Shown in pieces: positions 22,367 to 64,000 of a stretch of DNA of 64,000 nucleotides. The stretch comes from Zancudomyces culisetae HAW-14-8 (taxonomy: Eukaryota > Fungi > Kickxellomycota): assembly GCA_052426225.1 (NCBI GenBank), contig JBNJNM010000012.1, positions 186,001-250,000 on the forward strand, given 5' to 3'. The position numbers and the translations under genes were made by a program. Each line of letters begins with the position of its first letter. Positions within the stretch are counted from its first letter, which is position 1. The notes under the pieces were generated by a model. The model did not search any database and had not been told where the DNA came from. It saw nothing but the letters and a program-made list of their open reading frames with translations.

Positions 22367-23179
22367 ATGGTAGCGTGGCCTCCAGCAGGAATAACAGTAG
22401 TACCTGAGGATATGATCCTTGGGTCTCTATCCAAGTACGTAATGCAACCTCAGTACGTACTGACCATCATCTTTACTTATGTCATTCTTGTTCATGTGTT
22501 GCAACCACCAAAGGAAAAATCAACAGTGTCAAGAATCGAAGCCAAGAAAAGCACCAAGGATATTGGAAAAGTCGCTAAGCAGAATAGTGCTCTTACTGCC
22601 TTTATCTTCTTGCACAACACACTCTTGTGCTTGTACTCTGCTTGGACATTTGTGAAGTCCGCACCATTGGTATATAAAGTATTTACAACAGAGGGTGTGT
22701 GTGATCCAAACAACGTATCGTGGAACAGTGGGATGCTTGAGATAACATACTTGTTCTACTTGTCAAAATACTACGAATTTGTAGATACTGCAATTATCTT
22801 GATGAAGGGACGTCGCGTGATAACCCTCCAAACATACCATCATGCAGGTGCAATACTGGGCATGTATTTGGGATGCCTGTTCATTCCCACACAAATCTAC
22901 TCTTTTGTCGTATTCAACTCATTTGTGCACACAATCATGTATGCATACTATGCGCTCACAAGTATTGGATTCACACCACCAGGTAAGAAATACATCACCA
23001 AGATGCAACTTACACAATTCTTCCTCGGTTTTGGAGTTGCTACAGTAATGTCATTCTTCGAACACTGCAACCAATTCACCAAAGTTTTGGCCACGTCTGT
23101 GAACTTGCTTTATGTTATCCCTCTTGTTTCCTTGTTCTTGGACTTTTCCAAGAAAACATACAAGAAAAAGGCAGAGTAA
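22367..23179 (+). CDS. GNS1/SUR4-family fatty acid elongase, paralog 1
   Basis: FYLSKYYEFVDT, LQTYHH (QxxHH variant His box), NSFVHTIMYAYY, ITKMQLTQF, C-terminal KKxx ER-retrieval signal. Confidence 0.95.
   Translation: MVAWPPAGITVVPEDMILGSLSKYVMQPQYVLTIIFTYVILVHVLQPPKEKSTVSRIEAKKSTKDIGKVAKQNSALTAFIFLHNTLLCLYSAWTFVKSAPLVYKVFTTEGVCDPNNVSWNSGMLEITYLFYLSKYYEFVDTAIILMKGRRVITLQTYHHAGAILGMYLGCLFIPTQIYSFVVFNSFVHTIMYAYYALTSIGFTPPGKKYITKMQLTQFFLGFGVATVMSFFEHCNQFTKVLATSVNLLYVIPLVSLFLDFSKKTYKKKAE
22375..22968 (+). repeat. Inverted-repeat arm shared with elongase paralog 2 (partner ~37747-38340)
   Basis: 22375-22839 is the reverse complement of 37876-38340 with one substitution seen by eye. Similarity is patchy up to ~22968, then the copies diverge. 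Confidence 0.93.
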
Positions 23180-37532: not shown

Positions 37533-38348
37533 CTACACCGCTTTTTTCTTACGATACGTTTTTTTGGAAAAATCTAAAAACATAACTGCTAAATAAACCA
37601 CATATGCTAGATTCACAGACGTGGCCATGACCTTATAAAAGTCGTTGCAATGCTCCATACAGTTCATGATAATACCAGCAGGGACTCCTGTAAAAAATTG
37701 AACAAGTTGCAGTCTTGTAATGTATTCTTTTCCGGACGGAGAAAACCCAATACTTGTGAGCGCATAATATGCATACATGATTGTGTGCACAAATGAGTTG
37801 AATACGACAAAAACAAATATCTGTGTGGGAATGAACAGGCATCCCAAATACATGCCCAGTACTGCCCCCGCGTGGTGGTATGTTTGGAGGGTTATCACGC
37901 GACGTCCCTTCATCAAGATAATTGCAGTATCTACAAATTCGTAGTATTTTGACAAGTAGAACAAGTATGTTATCTCAAGCATCCCACTGTTCCACGATAC
38001 GTTGTTTGGATCACACACACCCTCTGTTGTAAATACTTTATATACCAATGGTGCGGACTTCACAAATGTCCAAGCAGAGTACAAGCACAAGAATGTGTTG
38101 TGCAAGAAGATAAAGGCAGTAAGAGCACTATTCTGCTTAGCGACTTTTCCAATATCCTTGGTGCTTTTCTTGGCTTCGATTCTTGACACTGTTGATTTTT
38201 CCTTTGGTGGTTGCAACACATGAACAAGAATGACATAAGTAAAGATGATGGTCAGTACGTACTGAGGTTGCATTACGTACTTGGATAGAGACCCAAGGAT
38301 CATATCCTCAGGTACTACTGTTATTCCTGCTGGAGGCCACACCACCAT
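37533..38348 (-). CDS. GNS1/SUR4-family fatty acid elongase, paralog 2
   Basis: Same motifs as paralog 1. The first ~200 aa are nearly identical and the last ~70 aa are diverged. Ends KKAV (KKxx). Confidence 0.95.
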   Translation of the reverse strand: MVVWPPAGITVVPEDMILGSLSKYVMQPQYVLTIIFTYVILVHVLQPPKEKSTVSRIEAKKSTKDIGKVAKQNSALTAFIFLHNTFLCLYSAWTFVKSAPLVYKVFTTEGVCDPNNVSWNSGMLEITYLFYLSKYYEFVDTAIILMKGRRVITLQTYHHAGAVLGMYLGCLFIPTQIFVFVVFNSFVHTIMYAYYALTSIGFSPSGKEYITRLQLVQFFTGVPAGIIMNCMEHCNDFYKVMATSVNLAYVVYLAVMFLDFSKKTYRKKKAV

Positions 38349-56662: not shown

Positions 56663-58336
56663 ATTAGATATCTAAGGTTTATACACTAAAACTGATAATA
56701 TGAAAAGGATAAATACAGTTAGTGAAGTTTGGGGGATAAGGGTGGATTTCTTTAGGTTCTGATTTACAACTTAAGTCTCGATGTGCTTTTGGTTGTTTCT
56801 TTTGGAGGGGTAGTTAAATATACTGCTGGTTACTAGAGATAGTTCTTTTTTTTTCTAGCTATATATTTAATTTCTCGAGTCGGTTTATGATTTAATTTTC
56901 CGTTTTGATTAGTGAATGTTTTAAATACGACGACTTCCTAATAGCTATTTCTATGCTACTATGAATAAAAGGTAGAGATCTATTAAAAAAATGTTGAAAT
57001 TATGCTTCAGATTGCCTTGAGAGTTATTATCAGAATGGAATTTAGTTTTTTTGCATAATAAACTTTCCGTGACTTATATACGTTTCCATGAAACCGCGCC
57101 AACACTTGAAGGTGTTATTAAGTATATTTAAAAGCCGATATCAATACGAGTTAAAGCAATAGAAATGTATACTGTTTTTCTGGCTAACTCCTACATTTCA
57201 TTCATTATTCATTTTGAACAATATCACTATTGTTTTGAATTCTAAGTTTTAAAATAATAGAATCTTGAAATCTTTAATTTTATCCGTCACTCCTATTCAT
57301 TCTACAATCTGGATTTGTTGTATTGTTTTCTTTTTCTTTTTTTAGTATCCTCCTTGTTCATTCAAATCGCAAAATTATATTGTTAAAGTACAGCTAAACA
57401 ATTAAAACTTTTTTTTGTTCTATTTTACCCATTAAATCTGTGTAATCTTTTTTCTTTAAATTTGCATTTTAAAATTTAATTGTTTAACAAATTTTGGAAA
57501 AACAATAAACTTGGAATTGAAAAAGTCGGCCAGATATCATCTCTTTAATCATCACCCCCCCCCCCCCCCCTACCCTCCTAAAAAAATATTGTCTATATGT
57601 ATTTCTATCCAGTTGAGCAATTAAATAAATGGAACAAAAGGGAAATCGTAAACCCATTAGTAGGGGTAAACATGAATAGCACAATTATTGTACAATATTA
57701 CAATAAACTAGAACCGAACAAGTTGTATCATTATCTTTTCTTTTCGAGTATACAATTTTTGTTTACGCTACCAATAAAAGTAAATAATCAGAGGAAATAC
57801 CTATGCTGACAATCGTCCTCCCCTCTTAAGTAACTACAAATTTCCATAATAAACACAAGCACTTGAGTAGCTATCGGGGTAGAAGCAGAGTAGTAAAGTG
57901 CATTTGTTTCTAATGATTTACTCCATGTTAATGGAAGTGCTATTGAAAAGCGTTATTGTATTTTAACGAAAAAAGTGAAATAGGAACACTTGTATACCAC
58001 AAAAATGGTTTGAGTTCATCAAAACAGCTAATATTACAATCAGATCATATCACTAAGCCTTCAGCGTGATAAGATACATTCAAAGTAAACGAAACCCTTT
58101 ACATGCAAAAAAAATGCCTGTTCAATTTAACTATAAGTCAAAACTCTACATCCAAATTGTATATCCTGTAATTTTTTTAAAAAGAACAGGAGAGAAAAAA
58201 AAAGAAAAGTCGCGAACATCAAAAGGGGATGATAAGTTTATTCAAGGCTCCCACAGAGCTAAGTAAGTAAGCAAAGACTAGGAGTGCAGAAATACCAAAA
58301 TCTTCAGAAAAGATCATAATTAAGGGTTCTAAAAAC

Positions 58337-58795
58337 CTATTTGTATGAAATTTTTCCTTTGTATGATCCAGAGAAGCCGCAGCTGTAGATTGAGCGACGG
58401 TCGTCATCACAGTCCTCAGTTTCAAAGCTTTCGAAGGTGTAGGTTTCGGTTTTGCATCCATTTATCGTGAGATAGAACTCATCCTCATTAAATGTAATGA
58501 TAGGAAGGTCTGTGGTATCAGAACTAGCGCAGTTACCAACCTCACCACAACTATAAGCACTGATTTTACAGTCCCTTTTCCAGCAGCCATTGCCTGACTT
58601 GAAGGCCCACTTGCTGTTTTTCCATGTTCCATCGAAAGAGTAGCGGAAGTAGACGCTTCCCATATCGTTTGAATCAGCACCAATGTAGATTTCAAAATCA
58701 TTGCCATCGAAGTTGCAGGTCTTTTTCTTCGAGCTGGTACGTGCACCGGCGACGGAAAGAACTTGCAAGATTGTGGTAAATACAAACAGCTTCAT
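58337..58795 (-). CDS. Small secreted Cys-rich protein, paralog A (152 aa, 8 Cys)
   Basis: Signal-peptide-like MKLFVFTTILQVLSVAGA, homologous to 61283-61708, TATAAATA at 58998-59005. Confidence 0.85.
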   Translation of the reverse strand: MKLFVFTTILQVLSVAGARTSSKKKTCNFDGNDFEIYIGADSNDMGSVYFRYSFDGTWKNSKWAFKSGNGCWKRDCKISAYSCGEVGNCASSDTTDLPIITFNEDEFYLTINGCKTETYTFESFETEDCDDDRRSIYSCGFSGSYKGKISYK

Positions 58796-59577
58796 TTTTC
58801 TAGGTTTTTGTGTGGTGTTTTTCTTTGGTGTTGTTGTTTACTTTAAACTATGATTTAGTTTATGCCTGTACTTTTAGATTGTACTTGTGGTTGTTCTTGT
58901 CCCTAAGACTTTGTTGCTTTTTTGCTTTGTGTTTGCTATGCAAATTGCTATGTGAATGAGTTGATGATATTTTTGAGAATGTGCGAACTTTGTTCCATAT
59001 TTATATCTAAAATCGTCATATTACCCGGGTATAGTACTTTAAAATATTTTTAAATTATTGTTATAACATGAGGTTATGAAACCATTATAGCAAAGTTTAT
59101 ATTTAGACACTTTTACAGTTTACGCTTTATGGTTAGAAAGAAAACGTCTAGTTTTGTAAGACTACAGTAATGATTACAAGAGAACAAACTTGGTATGCTA
59201 ATGGAGTTCATTTAGTTGTGCAACCGAGCTGTACTGATTTATGCTGTACTAAATATAGATGCACCAGCTACTAATATATTTGTAATCGCAAAAAATCTAT
59301 TTTTGTAAATGGGCGTTCTAAAGCAGCAATTGAGATTATCCAAGATTATAACAAAAAAAAATGTCTAAAATTAACCGATGCTTGTACTTTTATGTAAATG
59401 CTAGTAAGTCGGCAAGTGTCTAAATAAAGACATTACATAACAAAATAAAGCATGGAAATTACATACAACCACAGTAGAATAGAAGCAAAAGCTAAAAATG
59501 GAAACATGGGGATATGGGGGGGGGGGGGTGGAACTCCGTGATATATTTGAAGACAGTGTAGCGAAAATGGTGTGTGA
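58738..59577 (-). repeat. Left arm (840 bp) of promoter+signal-peptide palindrome
   Basis: Reverse complement of 60505-61340 with about 4 substitutions and a G13 vs C9 homopolymer difference. Confidence 0.97.
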
Positions 59578-60504
59578 GAGCATATGCAGTGTCAAGTTTG
59601 TTTATTTGTCTAGTTTTCGTTGTCCAAATTCACGAGCCTGGATCAAAATATAATATCCATTTCTATAGTACTTGAAACACTTCTAAAATATGCTACCTAC
59701 TCAACATGTAGCTTGATGTGATTTAAAATGGGCTTATTAGCATACAATCTTGACCTCCAAGGCAAGAATTACTTTAAAATTACCGTACATAATGTTCACG
59801 TTGTATGCAACCAAGATTGAACGAATGTAGGTTAAGTACGGGATGCCTCGGAAGTTTGCTTTTTTTACCTAACTGTCCGTACAGTCTACTCTATTTGATT
59901 GGATTTTTTTTTGATATGGGGCGCGGTCTTAATGAAGTAAATTCAAAAATGCCATCCGGTTAATATCATTGACTTTTTTTTCGAGTTTGCTAAATTTTTT
60001 GCAATATTAAGCCGACCAGTACCTTATAATATACCCAATTTGATATGACTTTATCAATGTTTATAGCATATGGATTAGGTTCTGTACTCTAGACAACGTA
60101 TAATGTGATATAATTTGTTAATCTGTATGTACTACATATACTCTGTTAGTCTGCATTGCCAAGTTATATTTTGGTAAAAGCAGAATGCGATGGCACGCAG
60201 AAGATTCTATTACATGAAGGAGATTATCTTTTTAGTATTTGTAGATTTCTTATGGCTAACAATTTTCAACTAGTTTGTAGGGTTTTTTCGAAGCATGTTA
60301 GATAAATGTGCATTTTAAAGGGGAAAATTCCAATCCTATAATTTGTCTAGGGGTCTAGAGCTTATTTGTTTTTATTAGCAAACTACATTGATAGGATGGT
60401 ATCTTCTAATAAATCTTTATCTTTTTTGGATTTGTATAGCTGTCCAGTAGCAATCATTTAAAAAGTATTTTCTTAGACTTCTAGTTTATACCTTTGCAAG
60501 TATG

Positions 60505-61340
60505 TCACACACCATTTTCACTACACTGTCTTCAAATATATCACGGAGTTCCACCCCCCCCCATATCCCCATGTTTCCATTTTTAGCTTTTGCTTCTATT
60601 CTACTGTGGTTGTATGTAATTTCCATGCTTTATTTTGTTATGTAATGTCTTTATTTAGACACTTGCCGACTTACTAGCATTTACATAAAAGTACAAGCAT
60701 CGGTTAATTTTAGACATTTTTTTTTGTTATAATCTTGGATAATCTCAATTGCTGCTTTAGAACGCCCATTTACAAAAATAGATTTTTTGCGATTACAAAT
60801 ATATTAGTAGCTGGTGCATCTATATTTAGTACAGCATAAATCAGTACAGCTCGGTTGCACAACTAAATGAACTCCATTAGCATACCAAGTTTGTTCTCTT
60901 GTAATCATTACTGTAGTCTTACAAAACTAGACGTTTTCTTTCTAACCATAAAGCGTAAACTGTAAAAGTGTCTAAATATAAACTTTGCTATAATGGTTTC
61001 ATAACCTCATGTTATAACAATAATTTAAAAATATTTTAAAGTACTATACCCGGGTAATATGACGATTTTAGATATAAATATGGAACAAAGTTCGCACATT
61101 TTCAAAAATATCATCAACTCATTCACATAGCAATTTGCATAGCAAACACAAAGCAAAAAAGCAACAAAGTCTTAGGGACAAGAAAAACCACAAGTACAAT
61201 CTAAAAGTACAGGCATAAACTAAATCATAGTTTAAAGTAAACAACAACACCAAAGAAAAACACCACACAAAAACCTAGAAAAATGAAGCTGTTTGTATTT
61301 ACCACAATCTTGCAAGTTCTTTCCGTCGCTGGTGCACGTA
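60505..61340 (+). repeat. Right arm (836 bp) of promoter+signal-peptide palindrome
   Basis: See left arm. The arms are separated by a 927-bp unique spacer (59578-60504). Confidence 0.97.
61073..61080 (+). promoter_or_regulatory. TATA box (TATAAATA) of secreted paralog B, mirrored at 58998-59005 for paralog A
   Basis: Canonical TATA ~200 bp upstream of the ATG, followed by an A/C-rich leader. Confidence 0.55.
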
Positions 61341-61708
61341 GTAGACCTTATGATGGAAAATCCTTCAAAGGATCAGTAAAAACCAGCGCCTCAGACCCAG
61401 ACTACATGGATTTCTACTTGGCTATTGATGGAAGACGTATATACAAGGACTCAATAAAACTTTACAAGTCAGATCCCGACTGTACTTCAGAAGACTGTGT
61501 ATTCGACTCAGGAGTTACTAACGCACACATCTCTTTTGACAACAAGCAGTTCTTCTTGTACATTGCTGGTTCCACAACAGAGATATACGACTTTGCAAGC
61601 ATCACTGATGATGACTGCTCTGGTAAGCCAATAAACGAATGTGACTTCACAGGTACATTCAATGGTACAATCTCCTTTGATGAGGATTCTCCAAGCTCAT
61701 TCAATTAG
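61283..61708 (+). CDS. Small secreted Cys-containing protein, paralog B (141 aa, 4 Cys)
   Basis: Identical first 19 aa to paralog A. Mature-domain motifs align with A (ISFDNKQFFLYIAG/ITFNEDEFYLTING; TEIYDF/TETYTF; DDC...CDFTG/EDC...CGFSG). Confidence 0.85.
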   Translation: MKLFVFTTILQVLSVAGARSRPYDGKSFKGSVKTSASDPDYMDFYLAIDGRRIYKDSIKLYKSDPDCTSEDCVFDSGVTNAHISFDNKQFFLYIAGSTTEIYDFASITDDDCSGKPINECDFTGTFNGTISFDEDSPSSFN

Positions 61709-64000
61709 GATTACAGCTACACGAGAAACAGGGTTGTATTTCAGCGAGTCTAAATTCGCTATCCTGACCGCTGGGTTCACTTTTTCTCCACATACTAGCG
61801 TATTTTGACATGGTATTTTGTTTCTTTTATGATTTTTTTATTTTTATTAGAAACATCTAAAAGTCAAGCGCCGATTTTCATGACTTTTTATCTTTGTTCT
61901 AATAAACATGTCTTTTGGTTTGCATAAAATATTAACTACAGTTTTTGTTATAGCAAATAATGTAATTCACAATTATTTCGAAAACAAACAAGTTTTAACC
62001 AAGTTGTATTATGAATAAAAGAAGAGGTGTAACGTCCCCTCTAAAGTATATATGGTGGCCAGTGCAACTGGAAGTGTACATGGTGCTAGTCTATTGCATT
62101 TATAAAAATAGATACATGTATCTAGAGCCTTTTATTATTTGTTCCAGTTTTTTTTTTGTATTCGCACTTGGTGCCTTTGACAAAACAACTAGTCGCACTG
62201 TCTATAATTTCACGTTGTGGAAAATATATAGATCCAAGTAACGCTTTTCAGCACAAACCTAAATTATAAACCAGATTTAAGCCAATACAAATGCATAAAT
62301 GTATACCATGGATAAAGATGAATATATACGTCGATACTTTAATTGGCTGGATAGTTGTGATTCTCAGACCTGACAGGTGACCCACAAGATCACTTCATCG
62401 ATAACGTAGTGTGTCAATGTTTCGAAATAAAATGTGAAATTCTGTACCAGCCTTGTCATCAGTAATTCTTTGTATTGTGACTTTTTTTGTTCACCTCCAC
62501 TTGCCCCTGCTTTTCCCCCTTATCGATGCTTATAAAACAAAGGACAAGTTTCTTGTGTTATTAAAATATGACCAAAAATGCTTTATAGGTACTTGAGTAT
62601 TATCAGGATGTCTAATTTTGGCAGTTTTTTATATTTATGTATTTTTCGGACAATAAAACCTAATTGCCCAATACGGATGCATGTTGTCAATGATCCCTCC
62701 TAAACTTAATAATGGTCTCGACGAAAATACGTATAAAAGAATTGTGAGCTGTTATATTTCTGTATATTCTGTCTTTTTATCAGATTGTTCATAATTGCTG
62801 TGCGTATTTTTTATCATTTGTCAGGCTGGGCAACCAACCTGACAAATGTTTCTAAATGAAAGACCCATAGCTTACATTAGATATATGTTGTAGCAATATT
62901 TGCTAGTGGTACAGCTTATGGAAGTATTTGAATAAATGCTATGCTAAAAGAAAAGGGAAAAACCACATAGATATTTTAGACAATCTGAATGGACACATTG
63001 TTGCAAAAAAAAATTTTTTTTTTCATTGTGTGACATAATTTGGAACACTGAGATTGATATCTTTGGTCTAAAATGTGTACTATAGTAGTATTGATATAGA
63101 ACGAGAATATGGAAATAAACAAGTGGGAATGTGGCGATGAGTGAGCACGGAGACTAAAATCAATCTGAAGCAAGGTTTGTGCGCATAGTTTCATCTGGTC
63201 ATAATATTCAGCTTGGTGGTTTTCTTTGAATGTTACATACTTGAGTTGAAGGGGTATGTCTAGTTGAGTGGAAAGGATTTTTTTTATTAGTAGTATAGTA
63301 TATTTATCAATATAACACCAGTATATAATTTGGATATATTTTTTATTGATTTAAAATTGCTTGCAAAACTAAGTGTTTTTTAACATCCAATTTGCTCTAT
63401 TGCTTCTGATCTAACATTAGCTGGCCAAATCATGGTTTTTATTGCTTGAATATTGTGTAGTGATTTTTGTGGTAGATTTAAATAGGGAATTAGCGGGCGG
63501 AGGGTAGTTTACAATTGGCATTTATTTGAATTTCACAGCAAAGCAAAAATAAACAGGTCTCCAGGTGCTATCAGTCCAAAAAAAAGAAAATAATGGAGTG
63601 AGAAAACAGCGGAGATTTGATGGGAGATCTTTATCGCTTAAAATCCATTGGAGAGTTGGTTTTTTTCGAGGCATTTCAAACAACATTAATAATAATCACG
63701 TTTCTAAGATTGTCTTCAATTGTATTTGGTCAGCAATACAGAAGCTAACCATTATTGGTAATAAAAAGAATATTCATACCTAGAGCATGCTTTCTATTGG
63801 CGTAATAAAAAGCATTTATTACCTCCAAGCCTGTTACCATTCAATTCAATTAAAAAAAGTGTAATTTGATTTGCCTATGTTTTCAAGCATGCTAAATCGA
63901 ATCAATCTATGGGTATTTATTGGCACTAAAAAAAAAAAAGTCTTTCGAGGGCTTTTGCATACTGAAAATTACCAATGCTAAACTAAGGAGAAGACTGGAG

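What the first reader, a model, noticed from the sequence alone, without database searches (positions are those of the whole stretch)
58337..61708. Palindromic secreted-protein cassette: constant promoter and signal peptide fused to hypervariable mature domains
Seen: two divergently transcribed small secreted-protein genes share ~840-bp inverted arms (58738-59577 / 60505-61340; about 4 SNPs plus one homopolymer indel) around a 927-bp spacer. Identity covers ~780 bp of upstream DNA plus codons 1-19 and stops abruptly at AGAR|, the predicted signal-peptide cleavage region. The mature domains are still homologous (FDGNDF/YDGKSF, C...DC, ITFNEDEFYLTING/ISFDNKQFFLYIAG, TETYTF/TEIYDF, DC...C.F.G...G.IS; all 4 Cys of B have counterparts in A) but heavily diverged, with A carrying 4 extra Cys and an insertion. 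A single recent duplication cannot give this step change. Inference: either arm-to-arm gene conversion homogenises the expression/secretion module while the cargo diversifies, or cargo domains are swapped behind a standard promoter-leader cassette. This resembles the conserved-leader/hypervariable-cargo logic of toxin and effector families. It may be an undescribed co-expressed effector or toxin pair, possibly a heterodimer.
Basis: partly seen in the sequence, partly recalled or inferred. Interest (0 to 1): 0.85.

Follow-up and report, generated by a model that had tools for sequence, protein, structure and literature searches.

The report
Promoter-leader palindrome kept identical by recombination
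Two back-to-back genes for small secreted proteins in the mosquito-gut fungus Zancudomyces culisetae share a mirror-image 840-bp promoter-plus-signal-peptide block, and a second copy of the locus shows that recombination between the two arms keeps that block identical; this is a clean example of a known process, not a new kind of cassette.

Summary
The arms at 58738-59577 and 60505-61340 differ by 4 substitutions and one homopolymer length. Identity ends one base after codon 19 of both genes, and the mature domains are old paralogs (49% nt identity, dS saturated).

The genome is Zancudomyces culisetae. The arm occurs only four times: here, and in a 99.5% identical segmental duplicate of at least 0.5 Mb on contig C6. 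That duplicate decides the mechanism:
- Five substitutions and one indel are shared by both arms of a locus but differ between the loci. This shows arm-to-arm gene conversion after the duplication.
- The 927-bp spacer is flipped between the loci, which shows a crossover between the arms.
- An inverted ELO gene pair in the same window lacks the shared-variant pattern and serves as an internal control.

There is no cargo swapping, because only A and B ever follow the arm. The cargo is not currently hypervariable: A is identical and B differs by 1 aa between the loci.

The proteins belong to a family found only in Harpellales. The fold is a confidently modelled all-beta barrel (pLDDT 91) that weakly resembles the fungal Alt a 1/PevD1/Tsp1 barrels (Z 5-6), with no sequence link. 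A heterodimer or toxin role is unsupported. This is a known mechanism in a new and well-documented instance.

The parts
58337..58795 (-). Gene A: 152-aa secreted-protein precursor. It has 8 Cys in the mature part and a Cys-rich insertion.
   Evidence: ORF. Identical copy on C6. AF2 model with pLDDT 76, the same beta topology as B and a low-confidence insertion loop.
58739..58795 (-). Codons 1-19 of A, the predicted signal peptide (likely cleavage after AGA). They lie inside arm A.
   Evidence: basic n-region, hydrophobic core with mean KD 2.16, small residues at -3/-1. Not run through SignalP.
58738..59577 (.). Arm A of the inverted repeat: 782 bp upstream DNA plus 58 nt of coding sequence.
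59516..59528 (.). G13 homopolymer near the inner end of arm A. Its partner is C9 at 60554-60562. Both C6 arms carry a shorter, interrupted run.
59578..60504 (.). Unique 927-bp spacer. It has no ORF over 52 aa, no internal symmetry and no RNA family match, and it is inverted relative to the flanks in the C6 copy.
60505..61340 (.). Arm B of the inverted repeat.
61073..61078 (+). TATA-like hexamer 210 bp upstream of the B start codon, with its mirror at 59000-59005 on the minus strand for A. This is a candidate core promoter.
   Evidence: The only transcript-derived contig begins at 61134. The match is to a consensus only.
61134..61393 (+). Stretch covered by a 260-nt metatranscriptome contig (2 mismatches). 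It bridges arm B (5' leader and signal peptide) into B-specific coding sequence.
61283..61708 (+). Gene B: 141-aa secreted-protein precursor with 4 conserved Cys.
   Evidence: ORF. 99% identical to NCBI OMH86397.1 of Zancudomyces culisetae. AF2 model with pLDDT 90.8 and pTM 0.83, nine beta strands.

Best explanation
A and B are a head-to-head pair of old paralogs from a Harpellales-specific family of small secreted beta-barrel proteins. Their 5' halves (about 780 bp of upstream DNA, the 5' leader and the 19-codon signal peptide) form an inverted repeat that is kept nearly identical by intrachromosomal homologous recombination between the arms. Non-crossover events (gene conversion) copy variants from one arm to the other. 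Crossover events flip the spacer. The outer limit of homogenisation sits where the sequences have become too different to pair. That point coincides with the signal-peptide/mature-protein boundary. Signal peptides are interchangeable, whereas chimeric mature domains with different cysteine frameworks would probably be selected against.

Shown: at least one conversion and one spacer inversion occurred after the C6/C12 segmental duplication. Inferred: continuous maintenance since the original A/B duplication, selection as the reason for the boundary position, and co-expression and co-secretion as the consequence.
For: 1. Arm alignment of the four copies. At arm positions 57, 239, 355, 442 and 523, and at a 3-nt indel at 54-56, both C12 arms share one state and both C6 arms share the other. 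Parallel mutation cannot produce this pattern.
2. Spacer orientation. The spacer matches C6 at 915/927 in forward orientation, while both flanks match C6 in reverse complement. An independent search agrees: spacer on C6 strand +, arm B and cargo B on C6 strand -.
3. Internal control. The inverted ELO gene pair in the same window keeps 33 paralog-specific differences in both loci and has no locus-specific shared site.
4. The arms are not collapsed copies. They differ at 3-4 private sites within each locus.
5. The mature regions are saturated at synonymous sites, so 99.5% identity over 780 non-coding bp cannot be conservation.
6. A and B are sisters in the family tree, support 82/76. This fits a local inverted duplication.
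7. The arm-cargo junctions also appear in an independent Illumina assembly and in a metatranscriptome contig.
8. The assembly is haploid-like, with 3 nuclear Rpb2-type genes. Of the 9 helicase-domain genes found on C12, only the two at 236,621 and 682,771 have a counterpart on C6. C6 is therefore a paralogous block, not a second haplotype.
Against: Conversion is not frequent. Within-locus arm differences (3-4 per 836 bp) are about as many as the locus-specific shared ones. The informative shared sites span only arm positions 54-523, which is about 260-730 bp upstream of the ATG, so post-duplication conversion of the proximal promoter and signal peptide is not directly shown. Site 830 (codon 16) has stayed A/B-specific in C12, in C6 and in the old assembly. 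No outgroup species carries the pair, so long-term maintenance is an inference. No raw reads were available, so all of this rests on one long-read assembly plus partial support from an older one. There is no GC enrichment of the arms (0.32 against 0.32 in the spacer), so no sign of biased conversion.
Confidence: 0.8

Rival explanations
1. One-off recent event. Shortly before the C6/C12 duplication, the promoter and leader of one gene were copied in inverted orientation over those of its neighbour. The arms are simply young and are not maintained over the long term.
For: Arm-to-arm divergence within a locus (0.36-0.5%) is similar to the neutral C6-versus-C12 divergence (0.41%). No outgroup shows an older palindrome. 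Relatives in Smittium and Furculomyces are single genes.
Against: At least one conversion and one flip happened after the duplication, so exchange is recurrent. A homology-independent copy would not be expected to end in frame at the exactly homologous codon of a colinear paralog. A homology-dependent copy needs pre-existing similarity, which implies earlier homogenisation. A and B are sisters.
Confidence: 0.12
2. Modular cassette. A mobile or standardised promoter-leader unit is placed in front of different cargo domains (cargo swapping), or the arm is a transposon/LTR end.
For: Only the abrupt boundary at the signal-peptide end.
Against: The arm occurs only four times in the genome, as two arms in each of two copies of one duplicated block, and always with cargos A and B. 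The other family members (C15, C10, C11, C21) have unrelated upstream DNA and different signal peptides. No transposase or recombinase ORF lies in the spacer or arms.
Confidence: 0.02
3. Assembly or polishing artefact that creates the palindrome, the shared variants or the flipped spacer.
For: No raw DNA reads could be examined (one search returned a single RNA run). The older Illumina assembly breaks inside both arms.
Against: Two separate loci have the same architecture and boundaries but distinct sequence. The arms are not identical within a locus, so they were not collapsed. Cross-mapping during polishing would homogenise all four arms rather than make pairs by locus. The ELO control pair shows no such pattern. 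The arm-cargo junctions are seen independently.
Confidence: 0.04
4. Purifying selection alone keeps 780 bp of regulatory DNA identical.
For: None specific.
Against: Selection cannot explain locus-specific variants present on both arms. It also cannot explain 99.5% identity across 780 non-coding bp next to coding sequence with saturated dS.
Confidence: 0.01

Closest known systems
Sex-chromosome palindromes of primates, maintained by arm-to-arm gene conversion (X palindromes: PMC8981503; Y palindromes from my own knowledge)
   Same: Inverted arms more than 99% identical around a unique spacer. Identity is maintained by intrachromosomal conversion. Spacer inversion occurs by crossover between the arms.
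   Different: The arms here are 0.84 kb rather than roughly 10 kb to 1 Mb. They hold only the promoter, leader and signal peptide, and the gene bodies lie outside them. The organism is an early-diverging fungus. No GC-bias signal was found.
Hessian fly SSSGP salivary effector families (PMC2955719)
   Same: The promoter, 5'UTR and signal-peptide coding region are highly conserved, whereas the mature-protein region is strongly diverged. The authors propose concerted homogenisation by short conversion tracts together with selection on the mature part.
   Different: Those families are tandem arrays of many genes with a conserved intron and 3'UTR as well. Here there are only two genes, only the 5' side is homogenised, and the cargo shows no recent diversification. 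On the other hand, conversion is demonstrated directly by the duplicated locus.
Divergent inverted heat-shock gene pairs (Drosophila Hsp70Aa/Ab, C. elegans hsp-16; from my own knowledge)
   Same: Head-to-head paralogs inside an inverted repeat, homogenised by conversion and co-regulated from mirrored promoters.
   Different: In those pairs the coding regions are homogenised too. Here the homogenised tract stops at the signal-peptide boundary.
Alt a 1 / PevD1 / Tsp1 fungal secreted beta-barrels (PDB 4aud, 5xmz, 7cwj; PMC6322577)
   Same: Small secreted fungal proteins of about 120-130 mature residues with an all-beta barrel and a few disulfides. They are the best whole-domain structural matches (Z 5.0-5.9, about 102 residues aligned).
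   Different: There is no sequence or profile similarity. Z is below the level that separates true relatives from common beta arrangements, and rmsd is 4.3-4.6 A. The AA1 family is reported only from Dothideomycetes and Sordariomycetes (PMC6322577).

Membership tests
Palindrome maintained by arm-to-arm gene conversion | Inverted arms of very high identity around a unique spacer | tested here: met
   Arms of 840/836 bp with 4 substitutions and 1 homopolymer indel. The 927-bp spacer has no internal symmetry.
Palindrome maintained by arm-to-arm gene conversion | Arms of one locus are more alike than the corresponding arms of a duplicated or orthologous locus (concerted evolution) | tested here: met
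   5 substitutions and 1 indel are shared by both arms within C12 or within C6 and differ between the loci. The ELO control pair shows none.
Palindrome maintained by arm-to-arm gene conversion | Spacer inversion through crossover between the arms | tested here: met
   The spacer is forward on C6 while the flanks are reverse-complemented.
Palindrome maintained by arm-to-arm gene conversion | Direct observation of exchange or orientation isomers in reads or pedigrees | not testable with these tools
   Only one RNA run holds any of the sequence. No DNA reads were available.
Conserved-leader / hypervariable-cargo effector or toxin family | Many different cargos behind the same leader or promoter | tested here: not met
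   The arm is present 4 times, with only cargos A and B.
Conserved-leader / hypervariable-cargo effector or toxin family | Accelerated, positively selected change in the mature region | tested here: inconclusive
   dS is saturated between A and B, so omega cannot be calculated. Between the two recent locus copies A has 0 changes and B has 1 non-synonymous change. A has the longer tree branch.
Alt a 1 (AA1) family, Pfam PF16541 | Match to the family profile | tested here: not met
   No Pfam hit for any of the 11 family members even at E 10. No PF16541 match anywhere in the genome (though the control genomes hold no member either). No PDB sequence hit.
Alt a 1 (AA1) family, Pfam PF16541 | Characteristic beta-barrel fold | tested here: inconclusive
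   PevD1 Z 5.9, Alt a 1 Z 5.0-5.4 and Tsp1 Z 5.1 each cover about 102 of 122 residues, but at rmsd 4.3-4.6 A and below Z 8. The best Foldseek E-value is 0.019, and PevD1 has prob 0.63 and TM 0.30.
Transposable element / LTR | Multiple dispersed copies, terminal repeats or a transposase | tested here: not met
   Arm and spacer are found only at the two copies of one duplicated block. No ORF over 64 aa lies in the arms or spacer.
Site-specific invertible switch (Hin/Fim/FLP type) | Dedicated recombinase gene next to or inside the invertible segment | tested here: not met
   The spacer has no ORF over 52 aa. The neighbouring genes are a C2H2 zinc-finger protein and a WKF-domain protein on one side and an NAD kinase on the other. 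The 840-bp arms fit general homologous recombination.

The most novel reading that the evidence does not exclude
The identical promoter-leader modules are maintained by selection, not merely tolerated. A and B would act together, for example as a heterodimer of Alt a 1-like barrels (Alt a 1 itself is a dimer), and would need strictly equal transcription and secretion. Alternatively or in addition, the asymmetric 927-bp spacer would act as a recombination-driven switch whose orientation shifts the A:B expression ratio. That would be a eukaryotic, recombinase-free analogue of bacterial invertible promoters.
Probability: 0.07. Interest if true: 0.7.

Novelty: new member of a known kind. Interest (0 to 1): 0.4.

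Why it matters
This is an unusually clean natural experiment on partial-gene concerted evolution. The whole palindrome was duplicated as part of a block of at least 0.5 Mb, so the two copies serve as replicates. They show directly that arm-to-arm conversion and spacer flipping occur in a zoopagomycete fungus, and that homogenisation can stop precisely at a functional boundary (signal peptide against mature protein). It also defines a previously unnamed Harpellales-only family of small secreted beta-barrel proteins. These are candidates for the poorly understood interaction between gut fungi and mosquito larvae. It does not reveal a new mechanism or a toxin system.

Tried and rejected
- Complex prediction of mature A with mature B scored 0.00 and gave no verdict. 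It is neither evidence for nor against a heterodimer.
- The ESM Atlas look-up of B gave only sub-threshold hits (0.87 or below) with no family.
- Foldseek against the PDB found nothing at E 0.001 or better. The galectin rows have TM 0.2 and were rejected.
- Profile search of the PDB sequences and Pfam at E 10 gave only noise.
- Rfam over 57500-62500 and a tRNA scan found nothing.
- Search for remnants of symmetry in the spacer, or of homology in the 3' flanks, found nothing.
- The test for GC-biased conversion found no difference.
- Metagenome searches for other strains failed: the family alignment was too diverse to seed, and an exact 37-mer of the leader gave 0 hits.
- Public reads: one metatranscriptome with a single informative contig, and no DNA reads, so spacer isomers could not be counted.
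The outer limits of the C6/C12 block were therefore bracketed from the helicase-domain hit pairs instead.
- The TE/LTR, invertible-switch and cassette readings were rejected, as set out under membership tests.
Full report
**Observation**

The inverted repeat is real and lies at the stated coordinates. The arms are 58738-59577 and 60505-61340, around a 927-bp spacer. Within this locus the arms differ at four substitutions and by four bases in a G/C homopolymer (G13 against C9).

ORF A (58337-58795, minus strand, 152 aa) and ORF B (61283-61708, plus strand, 141 aa) start 58 nt inside the outer ends of the arms. Identity runs through codon 19 plus one base. It then falls from 0.98-1.00 per 60 columns to 0.45.

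The mature parts remain homologous: BLASTP gives 37% overall identity, E 2e-23. They are nevertheless old. Nucleotide identity is 49%, third-position identity is 37.5%, dN is 0.65 and dS is saturated. The spacer has no internal symmetry, and the 3' flanks of the two genes are unrelated.

**Organism and copies**

B is 99% identical to NCBI OMH86397.1 of Zancudomyces culisetae, a Harpellales fungus of mosquito larval guts. The window is contig C12:186001-250000 of a 27.1-Mb, 25-contig assembly.

The arm occurs only four times in the genome: the two arms here and two on contig C6. The C6 copy belongs to a large block that is collinear with C12 in reverse orientation:
- The block is continuous over at least 130 kb at 99.4-99.6% identity.
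- Mirrored helicase-domain hit pairs show that it reaches at least C12:682,771 / C6:2,169,510. The C12 helicase-domain hits from 1.11 Mb onwards have no C6 partner.
- With three nuclear Rpb2-type genes, the assembly behaves as haploid.

C6 is therefore a recent segmental duplicate, not a second haplotype. Neutral intergenic divergence between the two blocks is 78/19,241, or 0.41%.

**Mechanism**

The duplicate acts as a natural replicate, and it gives three lines of evidence.

1. In a four-way arm alignment, both C12 arms carry one state and both C6 arms carry the other at arm positions 57, 239, 355, 442 and 523 and at a 3-nt indel. Five further sites are private to single arms. Variants shared by the two arms of a locus but not by the corresponding arm of the other locus can only arise if sequence was copied between arms after the duplication.
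2. The spacer aligns to C6 at 915/927 in forward orientation, although both flanks align in reverse complement. An independent genome search places the spacer on the + strand of C6, and places arm B and cargo B on the - strand. One of the two loci has therefore flipped its spacer, which is the expected product of a crossover between inverted arms.
3. As a control, the inverted ELO-family gene pair in this same window (22367-23179 and 37533-38348; Pfam ELO) retains 33 paralog-specific differences in both loci and has no locus-specific shared site. The pattern in the secreted-gene arms is therefore not a general artefact of assembly or polishing.

The arms within each locus are also not identical. 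This rules out a collapsed repeat that was traversed twice.

Site 830 (codon 16, GCC in A and GCT in B) is A/B-specific in C12, in C6 and in the older Illumina assembly. It marks the outer edge of recent tracts.

**Limits of the evidence**

- The informative shared sites lie 260-730 bp upstream of the start codons, so conversion of the proximal promoter and leader after the duplication is inferred rather than shown.
- Conversion is infrequent, because within-locus differences are about as many as the shared ones.
- There is no outgroup with the pair, and no DNA reads were available.

I still favour continuous homogenisation since the original inverted duplication, for two reasons. A and B are sisters in the family tree (82/76). 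A late replacement would also have needed either residual homology or an improbable in-frame, position-homologous junction.

The position of the boundary is best explained by heteroduplex rejection once the mature regions had diverged. Selection against chimeric mature domains, which have 4 against 8 cysteines, would reinforce this. That step is inference.

**Independent support for the junctions**

The older Illumina assembly (GCA_001969505.1) holds A with 636 bp of arm and B with 497 bp of arm. Both contigs break inside the arm, as expected for a repeat.

One environmental metatranscriptome contains a 260-nt contig covering 61134-61393 with two mismatches. It bridges the arm into B-specific coding sequence. 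Its one listed difference (61185, A to C) is the state of the other three arms. The contig begins 61 nt downstream of a TATA-like box at 61073. This is consistent with transcription, but a contig cannot prove a start site or RNA origin.

**The proteins**

Pfam finds nothing. An exhaustive HMMER profile search of 1.84 billion representatives found convincing full-domain relatives only in Harpellales fungi. These are paralogs in Z. culisetae (on C15, C10 and C11, plus a 241-aa member matching C21) and proteins of Smittium angustum and Furculomyces boomerangus. All are annotated as hypothetical. In the other species the genes stand alone.

All members have a hydrophobic N-terminal segment of about 20 residues, followed by a domain with four conserved Cys. 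The shared leader of A and B has a basic n-region, a 14-residue hydrophobic core (mean KD 2.16) and small residues at -3/-1 (AGA, then R). No signal-peptide predictor was available.

AlphaFold2 with the 11-sequence alignment gives a confident all-beta model for B (pLDDT 90.8, pTM 0.83). For A it gives the same topology with a low-confidence Cys-rich insertion (pLDDT 76).

The fold searches gave the following:
- Foldseek finds no clear PDB match.
- VIA-align ranks PevD1 (Z 5.9), Alt a 1 (Z 5.0-5.4) and Tsp1 (Z 5.1) among the best, each over about 102 of 122 residues.
- All three are small secreted fungal barrels, but Z below 8 with rmsd above 4 A is only a lead.
- There is no sequence or profile link.

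I therefore describe the family as an unnamed Harpellales secreted beta-barrel family that possibly resembles Alt a 1. It is not an AA1 member.

**What is not supported**

Cargo swapping or a mobile cassette is not supported, because there are four arm copies and two cargos. A TE or LTR is ruled out by the lack of dispersed copies and of any ORF. A site-specific switch is ruled out by the absence of a recombinase gene.

Present-day hypervariability is not supported either: A is identical and B differs by one residue between the loci. A toxin identity has no support. The heterodimer idea was tested once and returned no verdict.

**Comparison and verdict**

Mechanistically this is a miniature version of the palindromes that sex chromosomes maintain by arm-to-arm conversion (PMC8981503). 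In gene-level pattern it matches the conserved promoter and signal peptide with diverged mature region described for Hessian fly SSSGP genes (PMC2955719).

What is new is the instance. This is a promoter-plus-leader-only palindrome in an early-diverging fungus, with direct replicate evidence for both conversion and inversion. I rate it a new member of a known kind, of moderate interest.

**Unexplained**

The palindrome has diverged between the two loci two to three times faster than neutral intergenic DNA. The spacer shows 12/927, or 1.29% (Poisson P 5e-4), and the arms show 7-8/836. Mutagenic break repair at the palindrome is one possibility. Suppression of inter-locus exchange by the inversion is another. 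Neither was tested.

Read laying was given 4,501 letters.

Noticed in passing
window 22367-23179 (+) and 37533-38348 (-): A second inverted gene pair, about 15 kb apart, of two ELO-family fatty-acid elongase paralogs. A 657-bp core is 95% identical and contains a 465-bp tract with no paralog-specific difference. All 33 paralog-specific differences are conserved in both the C12 and C6 copies, so any conversion there predates the segmental duplication.
   Followed up: partly
whole window; C12:166372 to at least 682947 against C6:2702999 down to about 2169510: The entire window lies in a reverse-oriented segmental duplication of at least 0.5 Mb between contigs C12 and C6. Identity is 99.4-99.6%, with a 5.7-kb insertion on C6 at 2587125-2592878. 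The duplication ends before C12:1.11 Mb.
   Followed up: partly
window 58738-61340 against C6:2622047-2624639: The palindrome has diverged between the two loci 2-3 times faster than neutral intergenic DNA. The spacer is at 1.29% against 0.41% (P 5e-4), and 8 of its 12 differences are transitions. The cause is unknown.
   Followed up: partly
G000 contig C24 (outside the window), about 14-103 kb: Four copies of a unit recur at 26,032-bp spacing, two in one orientation and two in the other. Each encodes a divergent multisubunit-RNA-polymerase beta-like ORF (1095 aa) and an SF2 helicase ORF (592 aa). This could be a concatenated extrachromosomal, plasmid-like or virus-like element. It was not examined.
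   Followed up: no
L041, L042, L043 (Furculomyces boomerangus and Smittium angustum contigs): Family members from F. boomerangus and S. angustum fall in the same 90% clusters and differ by about one residue. S. angustum carries the P0009 locus twice, with identical neighbours. The two assemblies are surprisingly close, and S. angustum also shows recent block duplication.
   Followed up: no
window 59516-59528 and 60554-60562: The G/C homopolymer near the inner arm ends varies in length: 13 and 9 in C12, and a shorter interrupted run shared by both C6 arms. It is a fast-mutating site and a possible fragile or recombination-prone spot.
   Followed up: partly
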